From: Raja brachyura
Taxonomy: Eukaryota
Direction of reading: 5' to 3'
DNA: 64,000 bases
Assembly: GCA_963514005.1 (NCBI GenBank)
Contig: OY740799.1
Location: forward strand, 11,098,001-11,162,000
Positions within the stretch are counted from its first letter, which is position 1. Each line of letters starts with the position of its first letter. Shown here piece after piece: positions 1 through 25,725 of this stretch. Under the pieces are notes generated by a model that saw only the letters and a list, made by a program, of their open reading frames with translations, ran no database searches and had not been told where the DNA came from. The position numbers and the translations under genes were made by a program.

Positions 1-859
1 TCCAGAGATGCTCTATCTCATTGATTATTATATTATTGTATTTTAATATTCTTTTGCACTACATGGATTCTGCATGACAATCGTGCACGATTCTGCTGTT
101 TTGCACTCGTCATCATATTGTTGTATTTATCATTAGTGTATGTTTACTGTTACACTGTGAGCTTCGGGTGAACAAGGAACAAGGAACACCCTCTTAGAGA
201 TGATAATAAACTAATCTGATCTGAACTTGGGACCAAGCTTCTTGTTTTAAAGGCTTTTTATTTATAACTTCCACCACATTTAAAAATCAATCCACCCCTC
301 CATTCAATTGTTGTGCTCAGGTTTTCCATTTTCTATAACTATTTTCAATTGTTTTGTTTATTTGTCCTTTTCTTTCTTGTTGTAATTATTTTATAGTGAG
401 ATCTTTAATTTTGATTACATAAAGTTATTTGATTTCATTAATTTCTAGTTAATTTATTTTTAAATGCTTCAACATATTTGAATAATTTCATCAGTAAGTT
501 CACCTTCCAGATCGGGTTTTGTGTTTTTCGTTTTCTTTAAAAATAACAAGTGCACAAAGTTATATGAGTGGATTAGACCTGGTCACACATAAACTGAACT
601 AAAAGATCAATTTGCTGACCTTTAGAAATAGCACAACACCAAAAACCACAAAACATGTTTTTCATGAATAGAGGAAATGGAAATGTGTGTGGAAAATGTT
701 TGCGCAATTTTTAGGTCATGTAAAGTGACATTGTTTTGTAATTCCTCAATTTGGTTTATAATCAAATCCAGCTTTTGGATCTAATGACATGCTTTACTTT
801 TTAATTAGAAATTATATCTATATATATATGTAATTTCTGATAAAAAAAGTTTAACGTAA

Positions 860-1824
860 TTAGAATAAGGATATAAGTGGCTTGTTGTAGAACCTCTGAA
901 AAGTCGATTCATTTGACCATCCTGCGGCCGCGAGGATGTGGTCTAGAGGGACGTCCATTGCCCTCACCACTGACGTCGACGCTGCCCTGGTGGAATGAGA
1001 TTTAACGTTTTCAGTATTAACTCCCGCACATCCCAGGACTTGCTTCAGCCATCGTGAGATGGTCTGAGATGACACTTGCTTATGTGGCTTTTTGTGGCTT
1101 ATAAGTAGTGCTACCTCAGACCCTCTGAGGCTCTTCGTAACATCAATATAATGCTTCAAATGCTCCACTACACGCAGGCGTGAATCTGCTGGATAAGCTG
1201 ACAATACAAGCTTGAATCCTGACACCCCTGGTCTGCTCTGTTTGAGTAAGTCATAGACGTAAAAAGTAACGGCATTTTGTGATGACACCATCCAGTCCAG
1301 ATGCAGTTTGTTGAGAGTCTGAACCCTCTGCGCTGATGTAAGCACCATGATCATGACCAATTTGAGGGTGATCCTTAGTAAGGACAATGATGAGGCTGTT
1401 CCCCATTGACGGAGCACCATGAGTACCATGCTCACATCCCAGATTTGAGAGTACCTAGGCCCAGGAGGATTGGAATTAAACACACCCTTCATGAATCTTG
1501 ATATTAACAGGTGGGACCCTAAAGGTGGAGATCTGACCCTCGACACAAGTATGCTGACAGGGCACTCCTGGCACTGTTGATGGCACTGTAACTCAGCCCT
1601 TCACTGGATAGGAATTCTAGCACATCTGGGATGGAGACCGTGTGATGTGATGTTCCCATGTAAGCAAAATTCCTCCCATTTCCTGATATGGGAGAGGTAT
1701 TGCCTTTTTGTGCTATCCCTCCAGGATGATGTGATGGTATCCACAGTCTGATTGGACAGGCCCAGGTACGGCCTTTTAAAAATCTGCAAATCAACAAATT
1801 TACACGATCATTCAATGGGCACAA
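860..1824 (-). mobile_element. DIRS-type retrotransposon tyrosine recombinase remnant (frameshifted)
   Basis: ORF 860-1546 has tyrosine-recombinase motifs (AQRVQTL, KSHSTRAAS, AAGWS, FQRFYNKP). Overlapping ORFs 1519-1824 and 1601-1789 encode the N-terminal part (SWRDSTKRQY..W, LSYSAINSARSALS) in other frames. Confidence 0.85.
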
Positions 1825-1951
1825 CCTTATTTCTTGATATCATTTTGTTGATATCAGGAAATAAAACCGTGCCTCCTTTGAGGGTGTCATAAATCAGGAC
1901 GAGCGGAGATTGTGTGACAAGGAAGTAATTCAAGTGGAAAACAACAATTTG

Positions 1952-1980
1952 CTAGCCAGAAAAATAAGGTGTGCCGATTA
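1952..1980 (-). CDS. Candidate short terminal exon of the Ig-superfamily gene (VIGTPYFSG*)
   Basis: Acceptor atgttaccttag (ag at 1982-1981) is phase-1 compatible with the C1 exon; stop TAG at 1954-1952; intron of 171 bp. Speculative. Confidence 0.3.
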
Positions 1981-2151
1981 CTAAGGTAACATTATAAAGT
2001 GAGATTGATTTGATTTAAAAAAGAAGTAAATTTGGCCTTCGTTATTTCTATCACACTTTCTTTATATCCAGTAAAGCATTAATTTTACAACACATTCCAA
2101 CAGGGGCTTTGCTGGCCTTCCTGCTGAATTGATTCTATGATTCCATCCTAC

Positions 2152-2466
2152 CTTGAGCAACTGTATGAACATCAATGATGATAGTACCATTTAGCTCGGT
2201 CTGTGATGCCAGATGTTGGACTATACACGTGAATTCAGAGGAGTTGGAGCAATTTTCTGTGGAGATGCTGAATGTTTCAGTGTAGTTATAGGTTCCATTG
2301 GGATTGGTTGGGTTGCTTGTACTGATGAGCCTGTAGGTGAGACAGGTTGGTTGTATCCAAAAAGTAATAATATTTGGATAAAACCCATATGCTAAGCATG
2401 TAATGATAATTGATGGTGAAGAAGAAATCTTGTCGTAAGGTTCCAGGAGCCACAAAGAAGGACAAG
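2152..2466 (-). CDS. Ig C1-set domain exon
   Basis: ACPSLWLL...ITCLAYGFYPNIITFW...NGTYNY...FTCIVQH is the C1 signature. Acceptor tttttttataaccag, donor G|gtagga, 315 bp, phase 1/1. Confidence 0.88.
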
Positions 2467-2769
2467 CTGGTTATAAAAAAAAGCGAGAGATTAGCAATGG
2501 TATCATTCTGAAGTGGCATATCATTCTTCAAAGGTATCCAAATTACAAAGGTACTGAAACAGGTTCATATTTAATTACATGAACAGTACTAATTATAAAC
2601 ATACATTTCTTGAAATCAATTATGATCTTTATATGCAGACTGAACACCTGCATATTTTCTGTTTGCTTAATCTACAAATATATATGGAGCTGTATAATTA
2701 TACAAAATGTTTTGCTCCTATTTCCTCATTCTAAAGCATTCATCCCCATCTCAGCCATCCTATTCCCAC

Positions 2770-3192
2770 TATTCTCGCTAGAATTTAGAAGATTGAGGGG
2801 TCTTATAGAGACTTACAAAATTCTTAAGGGGTTGGACAGGCTAGATGCAGGAAGATTGTTCGCAATGTTGGGGAAGTCCAGAACAAGGGGTCACAGTTTA
2901 AGGATAAGGGGGAAGTCTTTTAGGACCAACATGAGAAAATCATTTTTCACACAGAGAGTGGTGAATCTGTGGAATTCTCTGCCACAGAAGGTAGTTGAGG
3001 CCAGTTCATTGGCTATATTTAAGAGGGAGTTAGATGTGGCCCTTGTGGCTAAAAGGATCAGGGGGTATGGAGAGAAGGCAGGTACAGGATACTGAGTTGG
3101 ATGATCAGCCATGATCATATTGAAGGGCGGTGCAGGCTCGAAGGGCCGAATGGCCTACTCCTGCACCTATTTTCTATGTTTCTATGTTTCTA
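2770..3192 (+). mobile_element. CR1 LINE 3' end
   Basis: SLEFRRLRG-LIETYKI...TRGHSL...[14 protein letters not shown] followed by a (TTTCTATG)n tail. Confidence 0.9.
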
Positions 3193-3347
3193 TTGTTCCA
3201 ATCCTGTAAGGACTGACATATAACTAGCCACTTTCACATACTTCCAGCCTAACCCGAATACTTTGCAGACACAAAATGCTGGAGTAACTCAGCGGGACAG
3301 GCAGCATCTCTGGAGAGAAGGAATGGGTGATGTTTCAGGTCGAGACC

Positions 3348-5707
3348 TGTAAATAAGCAATTCACATACTCTTGAAGTGTATAACATCCTTTAATGATAG
3401 CACACGGTGTAACACACGTCAGCAAGCACTGGTTACATTCTTCTACTGAAATGATGGTCGAAATGGGGGTGCTAGAAGCGGTTAGCAAGCCCACCGATTG
3501 GGTCTCCACCGTGGTTGCCACGCTAAGAAAAGACAAGAATGAAATATGCATGTGCATCAACCCGAAAGACTTAAACCTTGCCATCAGGAGACCCCACTAC
3601 CCCATGCGGTCTGTTGAGGACGTGGCGGCTCAGGTCGGGCAGGCCACCGTCTTTTCGGTCCTAGACGCGAAGAACTCGTTTTGGCAGATTCCATTGGACA
3701 AAGCGTCTTCTGACCTGACGACCTTCTCCACACCGTTTGGCAGATTCAGGTTTCTGCGAATGCCATTCGGCATCAATTCCGCTAGCGAGGTGTTCCAGCG
3801 AACGATGGAGCAGATATTCTCAGACCTGCCATGTGCCATCATTGTGGATGATATCCTGGTTTATGGGAAGGACATTGCTGAGCACGACCTGAACCTCCGC
3901 CGCGTCCTGGATCGGGCGCGATGGGCCAACCTGAAACTGAATCCCAAGAAATGCCGGTTTCGTGTCTCAGAAGTCATGTATGTTGGACATGTTTTTACCT
4001 CTAACGGACTAAAACCTGACCCTTTGAAGGCGGCTGCCATCTCCAAGATGGTAGCCCCCACCGACATGCCAGGTCTGCAACGCTTCCTGGGCATGGTGAG
4101 TTACCTTGGGAAGTTTATACCTAATCTCAGTGAGCTGAGTGCACCCCTGCGGCAGCTGACAAAAAAGGATATCGCCTGGGCCTGGCTCCCACTGCACCAG
4201 CAGGCTTTCAACTGTCTCAAGTCCAGACTGATTAACACACCGACATTGAGGTTCTTCGACGTGAGCCGCCCCATCACCGTCACCTGTGACGCTTCCAAGT
4301 TCGGTCTGGGCGCGGCCTGCCTTCAGTCTGTCGATGGATCGTTACATCCTGTCTCCTATGCCTCCCGCACCATGATGGACACGAGCAGCGATATGCTCAG
4401 ATCGAGAAGGAGTTGCTTGTTGTAGTGTTCGCCTGCTCCAAGTTCAGAGACTTCCTGTTTGGCAGCAAATTCACGGTCGAAACCGACCACCAGCCACTGA
4501 TGACAATTCTGAACAAACCGATTCATGCTGCCCCTGCCAGGTTGCAGCGTATGATGCTGCAGCTCCAGCATTTCAATATCGTCTATAAGAAGGGTACCAA
4601 GATGCACATTGCGGACACCCTATCCCGTGCCCCGTGGACCTCCTGTGCCCCCCACCCCTACGAAACAGAAGACTTGCTAGTACTGGGAGTTGACTTTATT
4701 CCCACCGAGCAGTTACAGCTTTAGGCCGAGCACACCGCTACCGATCCAGTTTTGCAGCGGATTGCCTTGGTGATTAAATCGGGGTGGCCAACGAAGTGCT
4801 CCAGCTCGCCAACTGAAACACAGCCTTTCTTCCTGGTCCGCGACGAACTGGTGCTACAGAATGGCGTTATCGTCAAGGGACATAAAGTTGTAGTCGATGC
4901 AACATTTGCCCACGCTCAGTGCCAGTTCTACTGGCCTGGAATGGCCAAGTATATCCGGGACCGCGTTTCTGCCTGCTCCACGTGCAACAGTCTTGCACCA
5001 CACCAGCAGCGACAGCCTCTGCTGCAACAACCTGCTCCTGCCTTGGCCTGGTCCTCGCTGGCTGCCGACATCTTGGAGTGGCATGGTAACCACTACCTTG
5101 TCCTGGTCGACTCGTACTCAAACTGGTTCGAGGTGGATTTGCTGACATCCCTCACGTCAGAGATGGTAATCCGTAAGCTGCGAAAACACTTCTCCACCTT
5201 TGGGTCTCCTGTCCGGTTGCAGACTGACAATGGAAGGCAGTTCACCAGCCGAGAGTTCAAGGTTTTTGCCAATAAGTGGAACTTTGTGCATTTCACCAGC
5301 AGCCCAGAGTACCCACAGAGCAACGGCCTTGCCGAACGGGCCATCCGCAGTGCCAAGCTTCTGATGGAACAGGCGAGACTGTCTAACTCTGATTTGTATT
5401 TGGATCTCCTGAACCTCAGGAACGTTTCCAGGGATCTGGCCATGGGGTCCCCTGTTCAGCGTCTGATGTCCATAACAACCAGACCCACTATCCCACTTCT
5501 GACACCATGTAGATAAGCAATTCACATACTCTTGAAGTGTATAACATCCTTTAATGATAGCACATGGTGTAACACACGTCAGCAAGCACTGGTTACATTC
5601 TTCTACTGAACTCAGGGAGGGGAAAGTGTTATGATTGATGTTAACCAAGGTGGGGTTAATGGTACTGATGTAGCTATATTATTGGTTGCATGCATAAACC
5701 ATCTACA
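3348..5707. mobile_element. Gypsy LTR retrotransposon remnant with inverted internal pol (RT-RNaseH-integrase)
   Basis: Plus-strand pol fragments (VLDAKNSFWQI, RMPFG, IVDDIL, CDASKFGLGA, TDHQPL, VDSYSNW, QTDNGRQF, YPQSNGLAER). Full LTR 5508-5707 (TGTAGA...TCTACA), partial LTR 3348-3450, 5-bp TSD-like agacc/cgacc. Confidence 0.92.
5490..5507 (-). promoter_or_regulatory. Primer binding site (tRNA-Leu complementary) of the Gypsy element
   Basis: The minus strand reads TGGTGTCAGAAGTGGGAT immediately after the LTR's terminal CA. Confidence 0.85.
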
Positions 5708-6454
5708 CGACCCTTCTTCAGACCTTTGTATACAGCCGTGTGCTTATTTTTTTGTTTTACACATTCACTTTTATTTGAATTGGCCTTCTCTGTCTGTGGG
5801 TCTAGATCATGTTGACTATGCTGTTCCACGATCATTCTTGGCCTCTTGCTTTGGTTGTATCAGCCTTTTCAAATTTCCTCTTCCATCGATGTCAATTGAA
5901 TGAGTAAGTTAACCACTATGTTCTCACACAAAACCAACAACCAAATCCTAAACAACCTCACTCCACATAAGAGGTGACATTTAATACAACAAACTAGTTC
6001 TCATTTTCAATGCATCTAATGGTTAATCAGGGATGAACTGAATTAAAGTTACTTCTTTGTTTAGGAAATGTGTTTTGCTGCAGCCTTCAATAGATGCAAA
6101 TCTACTTTCATTTTCTCTTGTCATAAATAGCCAGTTGGATTTTTGTAGATCTTAATCAGGAAAATTGACAGTTTTGTTCATAAAGATTCTCTTTTCTCTT
6201 CTGTTATTTTCAAATCTGATCCATAAGCAGTATAGAATTGACCATTAAGCACATACCATAATTGAGACAGCAAAGTACCAATTAAATAATGACACAATTT
6301 ATACATTCGGCAGCAAAATGCAAAATAATCTGATGCTTGTCAATCATGATGGCGTGTACAAAATGTACAGCATAAATAAAACATAGCTTTTATGCAGGGG
6401 ACAAAATGTCTCAGCTGTGCTGTAAATTCAAAGCAAAATATTTTGTAGCCACAT

Positions 6455-6662
6455 GTAAGAAGGAACTGCAGATGCTGGTTTAAACCAAAGATAAACACAT
6501 AAAGCTGGAGTAACTCAGCGGCCAGGCAGCATCTCTGGCGAGAAGGACTTTGGGTGACGTTTCGGGTCGAGTAGTGGGGTTTCGACCCAAAACGTCAACC
6601 ATTCCTTTTCTCCGGAGTTGCTGCCTGTCCTGCTGAGTTACTCCAACTTTCTGTGTCTATTT
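6455..6662. repeat. Fold-back pair of Penelope terminal-repeat fragments
   Basis: gctggagtaactcagc...tgacgtttcgggtcga, an 11-bp spacer, then tcgacccaaaacgtca...gctgagttactccaac. Confidence 0.75.
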
Positions 6663-7869
6663 TGTAACCATGATGTGTTTGTTGTGTCAATTAAATTCCT
6701 GGCTCTTATATAACAGCAGCATAAATTAGGATTCTGTCTGATTTGGCTATAAGCCTTGACTATGCCCGATTTTACTGTGCTTCCTCTCTTTGCTGATAAA
6801 TTAACTTGAAAAGATCTCACTGTCAATCTAGATCAAGCACAACTACACTGTCCATTTGAAACACATTCGGCCTCATGTCTAATTCAGACCACTCTTCTGC
6901 TGTAAGAACAGGCATGACTGATATACTTGTCCTATATTTGTGCCTTTTGATTAAGATTGTTCAACATCCTTTATTTCTCACAACAGTGAATAAAATCAAA
7001 TCCTTAATAAGATAAATATCATATGGAAGCATAGATAGCTCTCATTGAAATCGATAATCATGCTACCTTCCATTTTTACTTAAACAGACACATAAAAGTA
7101 ATTTACATATAAAATATTTTCATTGCAGTCCATTACTCAATATATCAAAACATTTGTTGCAATAACTTTCATGCTATGCAAAATTAAAGGCACAGCCAAA
7201 TGAATTGTATACACTGTTTTAATTTGTGGTAGTTAATTTCACATTCATGGACAAACAAGCTTCAGTAGCACAAATTGAGAAATGTGAACTACATTTAGGT
7301 AAAAAAAGAATTCAAGCAACATTTTGGTCCAATTGCTCCCAATTTTAAGTAAGGGATTCCAATAGTGGGCATGGATTAGTAATAATGATGGATTTCTTAA
7401 CTGGAGCTTTCCTCACAGTTTTATTCATATGTTGTACTCCTTCCCATAATTGCAACTTACAACTTTTTTTCTTTCAAAATGTTCCTTGTTCTGACATAAG
7501 GACAAAGATTTGAAATATTTATTCTGTTTCCTTTTCTGCAGACTGCCTGTCCTGCTATATTCAGTGTTTCCTGTTTTTATACAGTTATCTCAAAAGTAGG
7601 TTCAACCTGCCAAAAATGTGTGTTTGCGGACTCTAAGCCTTTCTATTCTGGACCAGGCTTAAGGTCAAATGAAGAACTCCAGCCGGCATGCTGATTTAGA
7701 TCAGCTAACTCACCGCAGTTCGATGATCATCTCTCATATAACTGACACAACATGACACATCTCTCATATACCTGACACAACTGTACGAAGTTAATTGCTG
7801 CAAAAGTTTGCATTAATTTTCCAAGTAAATCTGCCAAAAAACTGTTCAAAGAATTAAAAAAATAATTAC

Positions 7870-8229
7870 CAGTTACATTCAGCCGGGTGCCACTTCCCTC
7901 GGCTTTCAAAGTTGGCGGTGGTCCCAACCGAATCACCTCACAGCAGTAGATTCCATTGTCACTGACTTGAACATCGATAATTGTTAAGATGAATGCCTTC
8001 CATGTAGAATCATGCCTTACGCAATATCGAGAATGACAAACGTAAGGTTTGTCGGTAGATAGGTTTGCGATTATTATTGAAGAATATTGGCTATCATTGC
8101 GGAAAAACCACTTTACTGTAAATCTTGATAGACTATGCATGGAATAGGAACAATGTAATGAGATGGACTGTCCTTTTGCGATGGTAAGGGTATCAGGTTG
8201 CTGTAAATCATTAATTATCTTGTGTACAG
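7870..8229 (-). CDS. Ig V-set exon with joined J-like G strand (VJ-type domain)
   Basis: SISLHC..VKWF..FILTIIDVQVSDNGIYCC..GPPP..EGSGTRLNVT. Acceptor tctctttcctcag, donor G|gtaatt, 360 bp, phase 1/1. Confidence 0.9.
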
Positions 8230-9545
8230 CTGAGGAAAGAGATTCAGAAAATGTAATTAAAATGCCGTATTTCAAAGTTAATCTTCCCCGCGGTAATAAT
8301 TGTAATAAATGTAACTGTTTTTGTTTGAACCTCCTCTGCGATTTCCATATGAGTGGCTAACACGTTAAATTTATTTGGTTAAGTAGAGAAACTTCATAAG
8401 TTAACACTTCATATTAGTACATTTGCAGCTGTAATTGGAGTACAATTTTAACACTGCTCCTGCATGTTTTTAAAATGTAAACAGAGGAATTTTAAACATT
8501 GAAATACCATAGAACAGAATTGTTTTCAAGATATATTCTATCTCCGCTGCAAGAACAGTACTTCACAAAACAAATCCATTAGGTACCATGTAACAACACA
8601 ATAAGGCATGGAATGGAAAATAATGCCCGCTGTAGCCATTTTATGAACGAAGACTATTGTGATATTTTAACAAAATGTCACCAGATAGAGACAAATGAAC
8701 AAATCAAGCAACATAAGACCTATGAGGTATACAAAGGATAAATGCAGGACAGGTCTCAACACCAGGGGATCATAGGTTTACATGGAATACCACATTTCTG
8801 AATTAAAATGAAAGTTTTGGAAAGTTTAAACTAATGCTCTTTAAGTTTAAAAGCTCAAATGCTATATCATGAAATTTAAAAGTATCAATATATATTAGTC
8901 ATTTCAACTTAGGAAAACAAAAACACAATTGTGAATATTCAAGATGGTTTGAAAAGAAAGTAATAGCAAACATTCAGTGTTGCTAACCCATTTCAATTTC
9001 ACCGAGTAAATTCAACACAGAATGCACCAACAAAAGTAGAATCACATCAATTTTGCTATCATTCACTTTAACTGTTACATTTCATGCAGTTGACAACATA
9101 TAGTATAAACTTAATGCCTATCCAAATTTGATAAAATTAAAGAACACAACGTTGGAAGAACTCAAACAGCATTTGTGAAGGTAAAACAAGATGGTACTTT
9201 CACAATATTAAAAAAAAACCTTTTGGACAGGTACATGAATAGGATAGGTTTAGAAGAATATATGGGCCAAATGCAGGTAGTTATTGAGCAAATTGGGCCA
9301 AAGGGCCTGTTTCCACGCCGTATGACAATGAAAAAATGTAGGTCAATGTTTTGGTTCGAGCCCCTGATCAGGACTGATTTAGAATTTAATCATGAAATAT
9401 TGACTTACACTTTTTGCCTTCAGAAATGCTGCTTGATCACCGTTCTTTCAGCACTCTTTTTTAAATTCTAGATTCCAACATCAGCAATCTCCGTTTGCTT
9501 GGTGAAATCAAATTCTGTATAAAGTATTACACTCGGGTCTCATAC

Positions 9546-9594
9546 CTGCAAGAGGTATTAACAGCTGTAGGATAATGTAAAATGATGTCTCCAT
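9546..9594 (-). CDS. Leader (signal peptide) exon of the Ig-superfamily gene
   Basis: gacATGG Kozak-like start, METSFYIILQLLIPLA, donor G|gtatga. The 49-bp phase-1 exon is the typical size for an Ig leader and is in frame with the V exon. Confidence 0.75.
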
Positions 9595-10645
9595 GTCACC
9601 GTAATCACCAGCTGGACCATGAAACTCTCAGCATTCACAGCGCAGCTCACCCTATTATTTCTTGTAAAACATCAGATGATCCGTTTCTTTACATACAAAG
9701 ATACAATGTGTGAAGGCGTGCGAGCCTAATGGTTGCAAGTTTTGCTAGACCACTAATTCCTCTTGGCTTTTATGCAAAGGCATTGGGCACATGTGATTGG
9801 TATCATTTTTGTACGTCACGACTCTGATCTTTACCACAAAATATAGATTGAGAATGCTAAAGAAACTTTTATTGTGGCTAAACTGGTAACTTTTTAAGCA
9901 AAGTTGCATGAAAAATATTTGCATTTTTCAATGCAGCATAATTGAAAATGTAATATTTAAACATACCAATTAACGCGGGGGATTCAGAATTTCACATATA
10001 CAAGTTTGTGGGTTGATCTTTACATGCAGAATTTTTTTGTTCAGACAAGCTCATACGATTTAAACTGGTGCCATGCCAAATTACTTACTTACTGCCTATT
10101 ATACCTCCTGGCATGTAGGGCCGCAATGAAGGTCCTCCACTCCTGTTGATTCCTTCAGTTGCTGTTTCCGTAATATATTTGTTTTACGAGACGGGGTGTT
10201 AGCCATGAGCTCAACCTCCAACCTGGAGGACCAGTGGATGGCGGGGCTGGATTTTTTTTTTCATTTTGAAGAAAGATTTGATAACTGGGATTGTATTCTC
10301 TGTAGCAACGGAGGTGAAGAAAATACTTAGTTGAGGTGAATAATATTATGAGAATAGGACCTGTTTTGCTTAACAAAGAGTGTAAGAAGGAACTGCAGAT
10401 GGTGGTTTAAACTGAAGATAGACACTAAAAGCTGGAATAACTCAGCAGGACATGCGGCATCTCTGGAGAGAAAGAATAGGTGATGTTTCGGGTCGAGACC
10501 TTCAGACTGAAGAGGTTGAAAACCAGTCATAAAACACCATGACTGGAGATGTGTGTTATCCAACCAAGGGCAGAAATTATAATCATGTGTTCATCTTTAT
10601 TGATGTGACACCATAATAAATATATTACAGAAAAAATAATTTAAT

Positions 10646-24606: not shown

Positions 24607-24935
24607 CCTGCCCTTACACCGCGAAAACAAATTGGAAAAAAAGCACGTGGTTATTCGGGTTAGGGGCCGGATTTGGCCCGTGTGCCGTAGGTTGCCGAAC
24701 CCTGTCCTAGATGTTTGGCCTCATTGTGGTCCCTCCCATGTTTTACAACCGATTCACCTGGTTAGTTCCATCTCCGGCTGCTTCATGTTGTCAGCGGCTG
24801 CACATCCAACCAAGAAAGAATTGCACGCAATGTCACCCACAGCCACCAACTGACGTGCTTCACCGGACTGCACAGATCTCTGTGATGTGGTGCAAAAAGA
24901 CAAACTGTGTAGGGACTGAAGACAGCGTCAGAATT

Positions 24936-24997
24936 CTGTCATGAGCGAGGATGTGACAACACACGCAGAGGGAGACACATACACAAAGGGAGAGAGA

Positions 24998-25073
<76 letters not shown>

Positions 25074-25725
25074 GATAGACAGNNNNNNNNNNNNNNNNNN
25101 NNNNNNNNNNNNNNNNNNNNNNNNNNNNNNNNNNNNNNNNNNNNNNNNNNNNNNNNNNNNNNNNNNNNNNNNNNNNNNNNNNNNNNNNNNNNNNNNNNNN
25201 NNNNNNNNNNNNNNCTGTCATGAGTGAGGATGTGACAACACACGCACAGGGAGACACATACACAAAGGAAGACACACGCACACGAAGACAGACAGACACA
25301 CACACAGGGAGACAAAGACACACACACACAGGGAGACACGCAGAGACAAGCACGCGCACACACAGGGAGACGCACACAGACACGCACACGCACATATAGG
25401 AGGACACACTCGGACAAGTACACACACAGGGAGACAGACACAGACGCACACACACACCTTTCCTTCCCCCTCCCTCCCACTCCCTCTTTCCTCCCACTCC
25501 CTCTTTCCTCCCACTCCCTCTTTCCTCCCACTCCCTCTTTCCTCCCACTCCCTCTTTCCTCCCCCTCTCTCTCTTTCCTCGCCCTCCCTCTTTCTCCCCT
25601 TTCTCCTTCCTCCCCTTCATCCCCTTTCTACCTTCCCCACCCCCGTCTCTCTTAGCCTCCATCCCTTCCCTTTTTTCTTTCCCTTGCTCTCTCTCTTTCT
25701 CCCCTCCATCTCTCCCTCTCTATCC
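24936..25725. repeat. (CA)n / CA-rich and CT-rich low-complexity block with an assembly gap (N 25083-25214)
   Basis: (AC)n run, degenerate CA/GA repeats, and (ctcccactccctctttc)n. Confidence 0.95.

What the first reader, a model, noticed from the sequence alone, without database searches (positions are those of the whole stretch)
1952..9594. Non-rearranging leader-VJ-C1 antigen-receptor-like gene with a CD28/CTLA4-like PPP loop
Seen: three phase-1 exons give leader + V + C1. The V domain runs directly into a J-like strand (EGSGTRLNVT, a variant of FGxGTxLxV) with no intron or recognisable RSS, and its CDR3 equivalent contains GPPP. Known: C1 domains are largely limited to adaptive-immune proteins (Ig, TCR, MHC, tapasin, SIRP, some B7-family members), single-exon VJ domains occur in NKp30 and CD28-family receptors, and CD28/CTLA4 bind B7 through MYPPPY. 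Inference: it appears too divergent for a typical germline-joined shark Ig light chain and may be a poorly characterised VJ-C1 gene resembling the pre-RAG antigen-receptor ancestor (compare chicken PRARP and amphibian VJ-C1 genes). This is the strongest novelty candidate in the window.
Basis: partly seen in the sequence, partly recalled or inferred. Interest (0 to 1): 0.8.

Follow-up and report, generated by a model that had tools for sequence, protein, structure and literature searches.

The report
Skate non-rearranging V-C1 inhibitory receptor
The three exons are real and are spliced as predicted; they form the front half of a skate gene for a non-rearranging, antibody-like (V plus C1) membrane receptor that sharks, rays, gar, salamander and turtles also carry, which is probably an inhibitory immune receptor and possibly the cartilaginous-fish counterpart of chicken PRARP.

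Summary
On the minus strand, a leader exon (9594-9546), a single-exon V domain with a J-like strand (8229-7870) and a C1 exon (2466-2152) are open, all in phase 1, and have canonical splice sites. A 921-nt contig from an RNA-like run joins 7870 directly to 2466 and leaves the genome at the exon 2 acceptor. There is no RSS.

The gene is incomplete in the window. Full-length orthologues from rays and at least eight shark species continue into a transmembrane helix and a tail with two ITIM-like motifs, and no such exon lies in 1-2151.

More distant V-C1 relatives occur in gar, axolotl and turtles, and a second paralogue occurs in a ray and a chimaera. Databases name them "Ig kappa-like", "SIRP-alpha-like" or "uncharacterized".

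By sequence and by predicted fold, the V domain is closest to TCR V-alpha/delta domains. Its FG loop fits the CTLA-4/CD28X signature YxCx6PPPx5GxG exactly, but CTLA-4 likeness holds only at the level of this motif. The C1 domain is a derived C1-set domain with an extra cysteine pair.

It is not an Ig light chain, SIRP, UrIg or a CD28-family member. Identity with chicken PRARP is plausible, but I could not test it because neither the papers nor the sequences were available. My verdict is a new member of a known kind, of moderate interest.

The parts
9595..9800 (-). 5' UTR and probable promoter. It holds two CCAAT boxes (9800, 9786), CTTTGCAT (7/8 of the Ig octamer) at 9779 overlapping a CATAAAAG TATA-like box, and several short uORFs.
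   Evidence: Motif scan. If the X5 RNA contig is colinear with the genome, it would begin near 9722 (177 nt of exon 1). Promoter function is inferred, not shown.
9546..9594 (-). Exon 1, coding part: first part of a split leader (METSFYIILQLLIPLA plus 1 base), phase 1.
   Evidence: The N-terminus aligns with the Narcine orthologue MRISFYLFLQIQIPFA. The ATG has a strong context (G at -3, G at +4).
8230..9545 (-). Intron 1 (1316 nt, GT..AG).
   Evidence: The RNA contig diverges from the genome at the acceptor.
7870..8229 (-). Exon 2: end of the leader plus a V-set domain with the J-like G strand in the same exon (119 codons). It carries the signature Y94-x-C96-x6-PPP-x5-G111-S-G113-T-R-L-N-V. Cysteines are at 26, 64, 69, 95 and 96. 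There are three N-glycosylation sites.
   Evidence: Pfam V-set 3.4e-19. AF2 with an alignment gives pLDDT 90.3 and a 10-strand V fold. Best fold matches are TCR V domains with Z 16-17.6. Orthologues are 45-82% identical. An RNA contig covers the exon.
2467..7869 (-). Intron 2 (5403 nt). It contains an LTR-retroelement pol fragment on the opposite strand (RT/RNaseH/integrase ORFs at 3394-5516).
Evidence: Intron bins have zero or low depth in the RNA-like run X5.
2152..2466 (-). Exon 3: a C1-set domain (104 codons), phase 1 at both ends. Canonical cysteines are C23 and C80, with a family-specific extra pair C41/C72. The canonical C-strand Trp position is Ile. There are five N-glycosylation sites and an extra Cys at the start of the exon.
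   Evidence: Pfam C1-set 1.8e-7. The profile against PDB gives Ig heavy-chain C, UrIg2 C and SIRP C1 domains. It is 65% identical to Narcine. The exon is joined to exon 2 in the RNA contig.
1..2151 (-). Start of intron 3. It holds a tyrosine-recombinase (DIRS/Crypton-like) transposon fragment at 860-1824. The TM and cytoplasmic exons lie beyond the start of the window.
   Evidence: Pfam Phage_integrase 3.5e-9. tblastn finds no match to the orthologues' TM or tail. The RNA contig extends about 68 nt past exon 3 into sequence outside the stretch laid.

Best explanation
The locus is the 5' half (leader, V and C1 exons) of the skate orthologue of a single-copy elasmobranch gene for a type I membrane receptor. 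The receptor has a germline-joined, TCR-like V domain, one derived C1-set domain, a TM helix without a charged residue, and a cytoplasmic tail with two ITIM-like tyrosine motifs about 20 residues apart.

The gene does not rearrange. The conserved FG loop (PPP followed by the GxG bulge) and the conserved C' strand (KIIAN, glycosylated) point to a fixed endogenous ligand bound on the GFCC' face, as in CTLA-4/CD28. On engagement, the ITIM tyrosines would be phosphorylated and recruit SHP-type phosphatases to damp activation of the cell.

Shown: the exons, their splicing and transcription, the domain types, the orthology and the wider family. Inferred from orthologues: the skate TM and ITIM exons, which lie off the window. 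Inferred from family knowledge: the ligand face and inhibitory signalling.

The wider family (gar, axolotl, turtles, plus a second paralogue in a ray and a chimaera) also has members with an Arg in the TM and no ITIM, so it looks like a paired inhibitory/activating family. It may be the family published as chicken PRARP.
For: - Exons, phases, splice sites and absence of an RSS.
- A spliced contig joins 7870|2466 and breaks at the exon 2 acceptor.
- Pfam V-set and C1-set.
- A search of the V exon against 1.84 billion representatives puts ray and shark proteins on top: 82% to a skate-like fragment, 59% Hemitrygon, 58% Narcine, 43-50% sharks.
- Their full sequences read L-V-C1-TM-ICY(A/V)EL...(I/V)VYS(T/P/A)V.
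- Orthologues occur in at least 8 shark species. In the V tree the shark branching follows the accepted relationships of those taxa (own knowledge); the ray/skate rows sit in an unresolved fork with the shark clade and gar.
- The family HMM scores 150-212 bits for orthologues, 58-70 for gar, axolotl, turtles and paralogue B, and 46 or less for NCR3-like, TCR V, VL and SIRP.
- In the type A C1 alignment (skate, Narcine, two sharks, gar, axolotl, turtle) the extra Cys pair is invariant.
- The YxCx6PPPx4-5GxG signature is found in 14 of 18 family proteins scanned and in the window.
- TM Arg forms occur in turtles and in an axolotl two-repeat gene.
- The predicted V fold is confident and TCR-like.
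Against: - The skate TM and cytoplasmic exons were not seen, so the skate copy could differ from its orthologues.
- No tissue or cell type of expression is known, and the RNA nature of run X5 is inferred from its coverage pattern and the spliced contig, not from its record.
- No ligand or signalling data exist for any member.
- The PPP and GxG motifs are not absolutely invariant: Narcine has PAP and GNS, and S. torazame has SKG.
- Deep nodes of the V tree are weakly supported.
- The skate V and C1 exons carry extra cysteines (C64, C95, and C1 of exon 3) that most orthologues lack (Heterodontus shares the YCC doublet); their role is unknown.
Confidence: 0.75

Rival explanations
1. It is a true member of the CD28/CTLA-4 family (closest to CD28X/CTLA-4) that kept or gained a C1 domain. 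It would bind a B7-family ligand through the PPP loop, perhaps the B7-like V domain of the neighbouring Ig-NLR gene.
For: - The spacing matches the CTLA-4 and CD28X signature YxCx6PPPx4/5GxG exactly.
- With a tetrapod-weighted V profile, CTLA-4 is by far the best single-domain PDB match: 49.7 bits, i-E 2e-12, against 35.5 bits for the next.
Against: - All nine described CD28-family members have a single V domain and no C domain, and they carry other tail motifs (YxxM, EYEDM and others).
- With the shark/ray V profile, CTLA-4 is not among the 60 best PDB matches and TCR V-alpha leads.
- Fold searches rank TCR V domains first, and CTLA-4 is not in the top 48-50.
- The family's peptides are absent from the CD28 paper's supplementary sequences held as text.
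Confidence: 0.12
2. The skate copy differs from its orthologues. It would be a secreted, decoy or activating variant, or a decaying copy that is still transcribed.
For: - The 3' exons are not in the window.
- NCBI models of orthologues include isoforms without a TM or without the C1 domain (P0153, P0003, P0100).
- The skate exons carry cysteines that most orthologues lack.
Against: - All three exons are open, with canonical splice sites and conserved core residues.
- The RNA contig continues about 68 nt beyond exon 3 into a further exon.
- Every full-length elasmobranch orthologue has a TM helix and at least one ITIM-like motif in the tail, two in all but Chiloscyllium.
Confidence: 0.08
3. It is a germline-joined immunoglobulin light chain, or another chain of a rearranging antigen receptor, as the automatic names of several orthologues ('Ig kappa light chain-like') suggest.
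For: - It has an L-VJ-C1 layout.
- The V and C1 domains hit antibody and TCR chains in PDB.
- Germline-joined IgL clusters exist elsewhere in this genome (earlier notes).
Against: - Orthologues have a TM helix and an ITIM tail.
- Introns of 1.3 and 5.4 kb contrast with the roughly 2.5-kb IgL miniclusters noted elsewhere.
- The J-like strand has no F/W before GxG.
- The C1 domain lacks the canonical Trp and has an extra Cys pair.
- VL domains score only about 28 bits on the family HMM, against 150-212 for orthologues.
Confidence: 0.02
4. The V-C1 exons are upstream exons of the neighbouring membrane-spanning Ig-NLR gene and not a gene of their own.
Against: Orthologues in ten or more species are stand-alone proteins of about 330 residues with their own TM and tail.
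Confidence: 0.03

Closest known systems
[quoted passage not shown] 2019, J Immunol 202:1992, chicken PRARP genes)
   Same: From the title and from citing papers: these are non-rearranging IgSF genes with a joined VJ domain, counted among VJ(-C1) genes. From my own recollection of the abstract, unchecked: they have a V plus a C domain, a TM and a tail, come as a pair of genes, and are widespread in bony vertebrates but absent from mammals. That matches the taxon spread seen here (gar, axolotl, turtles, no mammal among the top 150 hits) and the two paralogue types.
   Different: No PRARP sequence or text could be obtained, so orthology is untested. If it is the same family, the shark, ray and chimaera members would extend it to cartilaginous fish. 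No citing paper mentions a PPP/CTLA-4-like loop for PRARP.
CTLA-4 / CD28X (CD28 family; Quiniou et al. 2024, PMC11599192)
   Same: The V-domain FG-loop and G-strand signature YxCx6PPPx4/5GxG has identical spacing. The GxGT.(L/I).V strand is shared. Both are non-rearranging and occur in sharks and rays through to reptiles.
   Different: The CD28 family has a single V domain and no C domain, and it has other cytoplasmic motifs (YxxM, EYEDM). Here there is a C1 exon and ITIMs. The overall V sequence and fold are closer to TCR V domains.
SIRP-alpha (the automatic name of several orthologues)
   Same: A VJ-type V domain followed by a C1-set domain, then a TM and ITIM tail. SIRP C1 domains are among the better PDB matches of the C1 profile (E about 1e-14).
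   Different: SIRP has two C1 domains. Its V domain scores only 27.5 bits on the family HMM and falls in the other half of the V tree. It has no PPP loop.
UrIg / UrIg2 (Flajnik et al. 2023, 2025; PMC12227049)
   Same: A non-rearranging elasmobranch gene with a split leader, a single-exon VJ and C1-type domains. It is also mis-annotated as an Ig light chain. UrIg2 tops the list for the C1 profile.
   Different: UrIg and UrIg2 have 3 to 11 C domains and form secreted or long membrane homodimers. The top rank of UrIg2 is the sum of three domains of 16-25 bits each, no better than a single IgG CH3 at 33 bits. The UrIg2 V domain is not among the best V matches.
NKp30/NCR3 family of elasmobranchs and amphibians
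   Same: A non-rearranging VJ domain with GxGT.L.V, and paired inhibitory/activating forms. A newt protein named NCR3 by UniRef joins the family's part of the V tree on a long branch.
   Different: NKp30 has no C1 domain and no PPP loop. The shark multi-V receptors with the GNGTQLTV motif (P0017/18/97, automatically named IgSF2/3- or SIRP-alpha-like; their NCR3 identity was not checked) fall in the other half of the tree and score about 26-36 bits.

Membership tests
Non-rearranging VJ-C1 IgSF receptor (PRARP-like kind) | V domain and J-like G strand (GxGTxLxV) encoded in one exon, with no RSS | tested here: met
   Exon 2 reads through to GSGTRLNVT. No heptamer/nonamer lies in 7600-8400. The RNA contig is colinear with the germline exon, with 1 mismatch.
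Non-rearranging VJ-C1 IgSF receptor (PRARP-like kind) | A C1-set domain in the next exon, with phase-1 exon boundaries | tested here: met
   Pfam C1-set 1.8e-7, above the cut-off.
Non-rearranging VJ-C1 IgSF receptor (PRARP-like kind) | TM region and cytoplasmic tail with tyrosine motifs | tested here: inconclusive
   Not present in the window. Present in every full-length elasmobranch orthologue.
PRARP proper (chicken PRARP genes) | Sequence orthology and synteny with the chicken PRARP pair | not testable with these tools
   The paper and sequences are not held.
CD28/CTLA-4 family | CDR3/G-strand signature YxCx6PPPx4/5GxG (CTLA-4, CD28X) | tested here: met
   The window has Y94-C-C96-EVIRLG-PPP-TLKAE-GSG. 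14 of 18 family proteins scanned match.
CD28/CTLA-4 family | Ectodomain of a single V domain with no C domain | tested here: not met
   A C1 exon is spliced to the V exon. All nine CD28-family members have one V only.
CD28/CTLA-4 family | The V domain as a whole is closest to CD28/CTLA-4 V domains | tested here: inconclusive
   CTLA-4 is the best single domain for a turtle-heavy profile. It is not in the top 60 for the shark/ray profile or in the top 48-50 of the fold searches.
Immunoglobulin light chain | Secreted L-V-J-C chain, with an FGxG J motif, a canonical C domain and no TM | tested here: not met
   Orthologues have a TM and ITIMs. The residue before GxG is E, K or I. The C1 domain lacks the canonical Trp and has an extra Cys pair. 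VL domains score about 28 bits on the family HMM.
SIRP | V plus two C1 domains, with the V domain clustering with SIRP V domains | tested here: not met
   Orthologues have one C1 domain. The SIRP V domain scores 27.5 bits and sits across the tree.
UrIg/UrIg2 | VJ followed by three or more C1-type domains, with V and C domains clustering with UrIg | tested here: not met
   Orthologues have one C1 domain. Per-domain scores to UrIg2 C domains are 16-25 bits, no better than IgG CH3. The UrIg2 V domain is not among the top V matches.
NKp30/NCR3 | Single VJ domain without a C domain, with the V domain clustering with NCR3 | tested here: inconclusive
   The C1 domain argues against membership. A newt protein automatically named NCR3 joins the family's side of the tree on a long branch (91/85), while shark multi-V receptors with the GNGTQLTV motif (identity as NCR3 unchecked) do not. 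No curated NCR3 sequences were at hand.

The most novel reading that the evidence does not exclude
The gene is the skate member of an undescribed family of two-domain VJ-C1 paired receptors spread across jawed vertebrates but lost in mammals. Sharks and rays have ITIM forms, and tetrapods also have TM-Arg forms. Its V domain is TCR-like yet carries the CTLA-4/CD28X PPP-GxG signature. On this reading it would be a living example of the two-domain VJ-C1 precursor postulated for antigen receptors (Flajnik et al. 2025, Fig. 2) and a link between antigen-receptor V domains and the CD28 co-receptor family. It would not be simply PRARP under another name.
Probability: 0.25. Interest if true: 0.8.

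Novelty: new member of a known kind. Interest (0 to 1): 0.5.

Why it matters
Non-rearranging VJ-C1 genes are the material from which the origin of antibodies and T-cell receptors is reconstructed. A single-copy VJ-C1 receptor has been conserved from chimaera, sharks and rays to turtles. It has a TCR-like V domain and a CTLA-4-type ligand loop, and genome annotations currently hide it under wrong names.

If it is PRARP, its range extends to the oldest jawed vertebrates. If it is not, it is a further candidate relic to place in V and C1 phylogenies beside UrIg, UrIg2, NCR3 and the CD28 family.

It also offers a testable receptor-ligand question: does the PPP loop bind a B7-like partner, possibly the neighbouring Ig-NLR?

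Tried and rejected
- Single-sequence AlphaFold of the V exon failed (pLDDT 36). Only the alignment-based model was used.
- The first-place rank of UrIg2 for the C1 profile was rejected as evidence of special kinship. It is the sum of three domains of 16-25 bits each.
- The CTLA-4 top rank was re-tested with a shark/ray-only profile and vanished. I therefore claim CTLA-4 likeness only at the motif level.
- The PRARP test failed for lack of material. The papers are not held. Text searches found only two passing mentions, with nothing in the supplements. No paper cites the orthologues' accession numbers.
- Profile and turtle-seeded protein searches reached turtles but no bird, and nothing was named PRARP.
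- The protein Atlas gave only generic V/C1 clusters.
- Run records do not say that X5 is RNA. That is inferred from its coverage and the spliced contig.
Full-length analyses used database orthologues only.

Full report
**What is in the sequence**

Read on the minus strand, the region holds three open exons with canonical splice sites, all in phase 1.
- Exon 1 runs from the ATG at 9594 to 9546. It encodes METSFYIILQLLIPLA plus one base, with donor AG|GTATGA.
- Exon 2 is 8229-7870: 2 bases, 119 codons and 1 base, with acceptor TTTCCTCAG| and donor CTG|GTAATT.
- Exon 3 is 2466-2152: 2 bases, 104 codons and 1 base, with acceptor T8ATAACCAG| and donor AAG|GTAGGA.
- The introns are 1316 and 5403 nt long.

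The finding's lower bound (1952) lies in intron 3. Exon 3 ends at 2152.

Pfam calls exon 2 a full-length V-set domain (E 3.4e-19, model positions 1-109 of 109). It calls exon 3 a C1-set domain (E 1.8e-7, 31.8 bits against a cut-off of 21), ahead of CD80-like C2-set (3e-4).

The V exon runs without interruption into the J-like strand E-G-S-G-T-R-L-N-V-T. No RSS-like heptamer/nonamer pair lies within 7600-8400 on either strand, and there is no CAC[AT]GTG in the exon.

**Is it expressed and spliced?**

The run search listed no run recorded as RNA. However, run X5 is from the same organism as the runs that hold 100% of the words, and it behaves like RNA. Exon bins have depth 9-12, while intron bins have depth 0-2.7.

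X5 contains one 921-nt contig on the minus strand (table 8, record 17):
- Positions 175-537 lie on 8232-7870.
- Positions 538-704 lie directly on 2466-2300, where the laid stretch ended.
- There is one mismatch in total.

This is exactly the predicted 7870|2466 junction.

The contig also stops matching the genome at the exon 2 acceptor. The three extra matching bases, 'cag', are the last three bases of exon 1, as expected for a 9546|8229 junction. The 174 nt upstream were outside the stretch laid, so exon 1 itself is inferred.

About 68 nt of the contig lie beyond exon 3, which implies a further exon.

In run X1, from another organism (97% identity), a contig ends exactly at 7870 with 9 unmatched letters beyond. 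The same donor is therefore used in a related species.

Runs X4 and X6 cover the introns and look like genomic DNA.

**The gene is incomplete in the window**

tblastn with full-length relatives finds only the V exon (8233-7868) and the C1 exon (2467-2153). No TM or tail exon lies in 1-2151, and there is no second copy in the 64 kb.

The ORFs downstream of exon 3 (860-1824, minus strand) belong to a tyrosine-recombinase transposon fragment (Pfam Phage_integrase 3.5e-9). Intron 2 carries RT/RNaseH/integrase ORFs of an LTR element on the opposite strand.

**Relatives**

An exhaustive phmmer search of the V exon against 1.84 billion representatives puts these proteins on top:
- a skate-like transcript fragment (P0001, 82% identity)
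- Hemitrygon akajei XP_072922972 (59%)
- Narcine bancroftii XP_069765714/712 (58%)
- Stegostoma (50%)
- Scyliorhinus canicula XP_038667672/670 (43%)

The sources name them 'uncharacterized', 'immunoglobulin kappa light chain-like', 'tyrosine-protein phosphatase non-receptor type substrate 1-like' or 'CEACAM1-like'. None of these names survives inspection.

Full-length forms (Narcine 331 aa, S. canicula 344 aa and six further sharks) have this layout:
- leader, V and C1
- a short stalk
- a TM helix, ..LLS(V/I)(S/C)GG(T/S/I)AC.I.., with no charged residue
- a tail with ICY(A/V/T)EL and, about 20 residues later, (I/V)VYS(T/P/A/S)V

Both tail motifs fit the ITIM consensus.

In a maximum-likelihood tree of V domains, the window's V groups with the skate-like fragment, the two rays, the sharks and gar. 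The shark clade branches in the accepted taxonomic order (squalomorphs outside Heterodontus, catsharks and carpet sharks; taxon relationships are my own knowledge), while the ray/skate rows are left in an unresolved fork. This is what a single-copy orthologue would give. Deep nodes of that tree are weak.

**A wider family**

More distant hits share the V-C1 layout, the PPP loop and GxGT.L.V:
- gar XP_015207742
- axolotl XP_069483861
- an axolotl gene with two V-C1 repeats, XP_069483859
- turtles (LOC103306549 and others)
- an unidentified archosaur- or turtle-like transcript (P0179)

A second paralogue type, 'B', occurs in Hemitrygon (XP_072900657) and Callorhinchus (LOC103180135, known as cDNA). 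Its C1 domain is canonical.

On an HMM built from the shark/ray V domains:
- orthologues score 150-212 bits
- gar, axolotl, turtles and type B score 58-70 bits
- everything else scores 46 bits or less (NCR3-like newt 46, TCR V-alpha-like 35-37, VL 28, SIRP 27.5)

No mammal appears in the family among the 150 best hits.

The C1 domains of type A share an invariant extra cysteine pair (C41 and C72 in window numbering). They also replace the canonical C-strand Trp, which is Ile37 in the skate. The neighbouring W36 is one position out of register.

Turtle members and the axolotl two-repeat gene have an Arg inside the TM helix and, apart from one SLYTAV in Caretta, no ITIM-like motif. The gar and the other axolotl gene do have ITIM-like motifs. 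The family thus looks like a paired inhibitory/activating receptor family.

**What the domains resemble**

V domain:
- The shark/ray V profile finds TCR V-alpha chains as the best single-domain PDB matches (about 45 bits, E about 1e-10), followed by light-chain V domains.
- The AlphaFold model built on a 19-sequence alignment is confident (pLDDT 90.3, pTM 0.83).
- Its nearest solved structures are TCR V-delta, V-alpha and V-beta domains. Foldseek gives E 6.5e-11 and TM about 0.8. VIA-align gives Z 16-17.6, against 15-16 for antibody V domains and 15.1 for PD-1.
- The differences between these ranks are small, but the V domain is clearly of the antigen-receptor type.

FG loop and G strand:
- The loop and strand read Y94-C-C96-EVIRLG-PPP-TLKAE-G-S-G-T-R-L-N-V.
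- This is the signature YxCx6PPPx4/5GxG that Quiniou et al. 2024 use to define CTLA-4-like CDR3 regions and CD28X. The spacing is the same as in CTLA-4.
- It is present in 14 of 18 family proteins scanned. Narcine has PAP/GNS and S. torazame has SKG (the other two are an N-terminally cut fragment and P0013, whose loop differs by one residue in spacing).
- A turtle-weighted V profile makes CTLA-4 the best single-domain PDB match by a wide margin: 49.7 bits, i-E 2e-12.
- With the shark/ray profile CTLA-4 drops out of the top 60, and it is not among the best fold matches.
- I therefore claim CTLA-4 likeness for the loop and strand only.

C1 domain:
- The C1 profile ranks UrIg2 first (E 1.4e-18). 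That rank is the sum of three domains of 16-25 bits each.
- A single IgG CH3 domain scores 33 bits, and SIRP C1 domains are comparable.
- The domain is a generic, somewhat derived C1-set domain.

**How it most likely works**

Shown: this is a transcribed, spliced, non-rearranging gene whose product starts with a split leader, a TCR-like V domain and a C1 domain.

Inferred from orthologues: a single-pass membrane anchor and two ITIMs. The receptor would then recruit SHP-type phosphatases after tyrosine phosphorylation and damp the cell that carries it.

Inferred from conservation: the FG loop (PPP), the GxG bulge and the glycosylated C' strand (KIIAN-L-S) are the most conserved surface elements. 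This points to one conserved endogenous ligand bound on the GFCC' face, as CTLA-4 and CD28 bind B7. It does not suggest a variable antigen-binding site.

Whether it is the partner is pure speculation.

**What it is not**

- Not an Ig light chain: orthologues have a TM and ITIMs, there is no F/W before GxG, and the C domain is derived.
- Not SIRP: there is one C1 domain, not two, and the V domain falls elsewhere in the tree.
- Not UrIg or UrIg2: there is one C domain, not three or more, and no special V or C affinity.
- Not a CD28-family member by architecture: it has a C1 domain and different tail motifs. Its peptides are not in that paper's supplementary sequences.
- NCR3 kinship cannot be excluded at depth, because a newt protein named NCR3 joins on a long branch. 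The shark multi-V receptors with a GNGTQLTV-type strand, which may be NCR3-like, are distant, and NKp30 has no C1 domain.

**PRARP**

The closest published concept is the PRARP pair of chicken (Fu et al. 2019). Two held papers cite it among VJ or VJ-C1 genes.

The layout, the two paralogue types and the taxon spread (bony vertebrates without mammals, as I recall the abstract) fit what I see here.

Neither the paper nor any PRARP sequence could be obtained. My protein searches reached turtles but no bird.

I put the chance that this family is PRARP at about one half. In that case the cartilaginous-fish members, and the CTLA-4-type loop, would be the additions.

**Verdict**

The gene is a new member of a known kind, the non-rearranging VJ-C1 immune receptors, and is of moderate interest.

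The most novel reading not excluded is an undescribed VJ-C1 family spanning jawed vertebrates that links antigen-receptor V domains and the CD28 family. I give it about 0.25.

Noticed in passing
window 46640-46966 (+): An ORF holds an exon of an acyl-CoA thioesterase of the ACOT1/2/4/BAAT family (human ACOT2 3hlk_A residues 170-226, E 2.5e-16). Pfam is blank for it. Human ACOT genes sit at 14q24 and BAAT at 9q31 (own knowledge), which is the MHC-paralogous 9/14 group. This is a weak hint about the chromosomal neighbourhood of the V-C1 gene.
   Followed up: partly
window 860-1824 (-): A tyrosine-recombinase (Phage_integrase, E 3.5e-9) ORF with an upstream ORF. It is a DIRS/Crypton-like transposon fragment inside intron 3 of the receptor gene, on the same strand as the gene.
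   Followed up: partly
window 3394-5516 (+): RT, RNase H and integrase ORFs of an LTR retroelement lie inside intron 2, antisense to the receptor gene.
   Followed up: partly
window 9595-9800 (-): Upstream of the ATG there are two CCAAT boxes and CTTTGCAT (7 of 8 of the immunoglobulin octamer ATTTGCAT), which overlaps a TATA-like CATAAAAG about 50 nt above the inferred 5' end of the RNA contig. The 5' UTR also has several short upstream ORFs, one of which (ATG at 9620, 20 codons) overlaps the main start out of frame.
   Followed up: no
related proteins P0171, P0173, P0174 (turtles) and P0013 (axolotl): These family members have an arginine inside the TM helix and, apart from one SLYTAV in Caretta (P0173), no ITIM-like motif. 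A linked axolotl gene (P0112) does have ITIM/ITSM-like motifs. This suggests paired activating and inhibitory forms in tetrapods.
   Followed up: partly
related proteins P0153, P0003, P0100: NCBI isoform models of orthologues skip the TM exon (S. canicula X3), skip C1 plus TM (Hemitrygon X4) or skip C1 (axolotl). Soluble or short forms may therefore exist.
   Followed up: no
window 24860-25662 (-): A run of N (an assembly gap or masked stretch) is flanked by low-complexity GT/CA-rich repeats.
   Followed up: no
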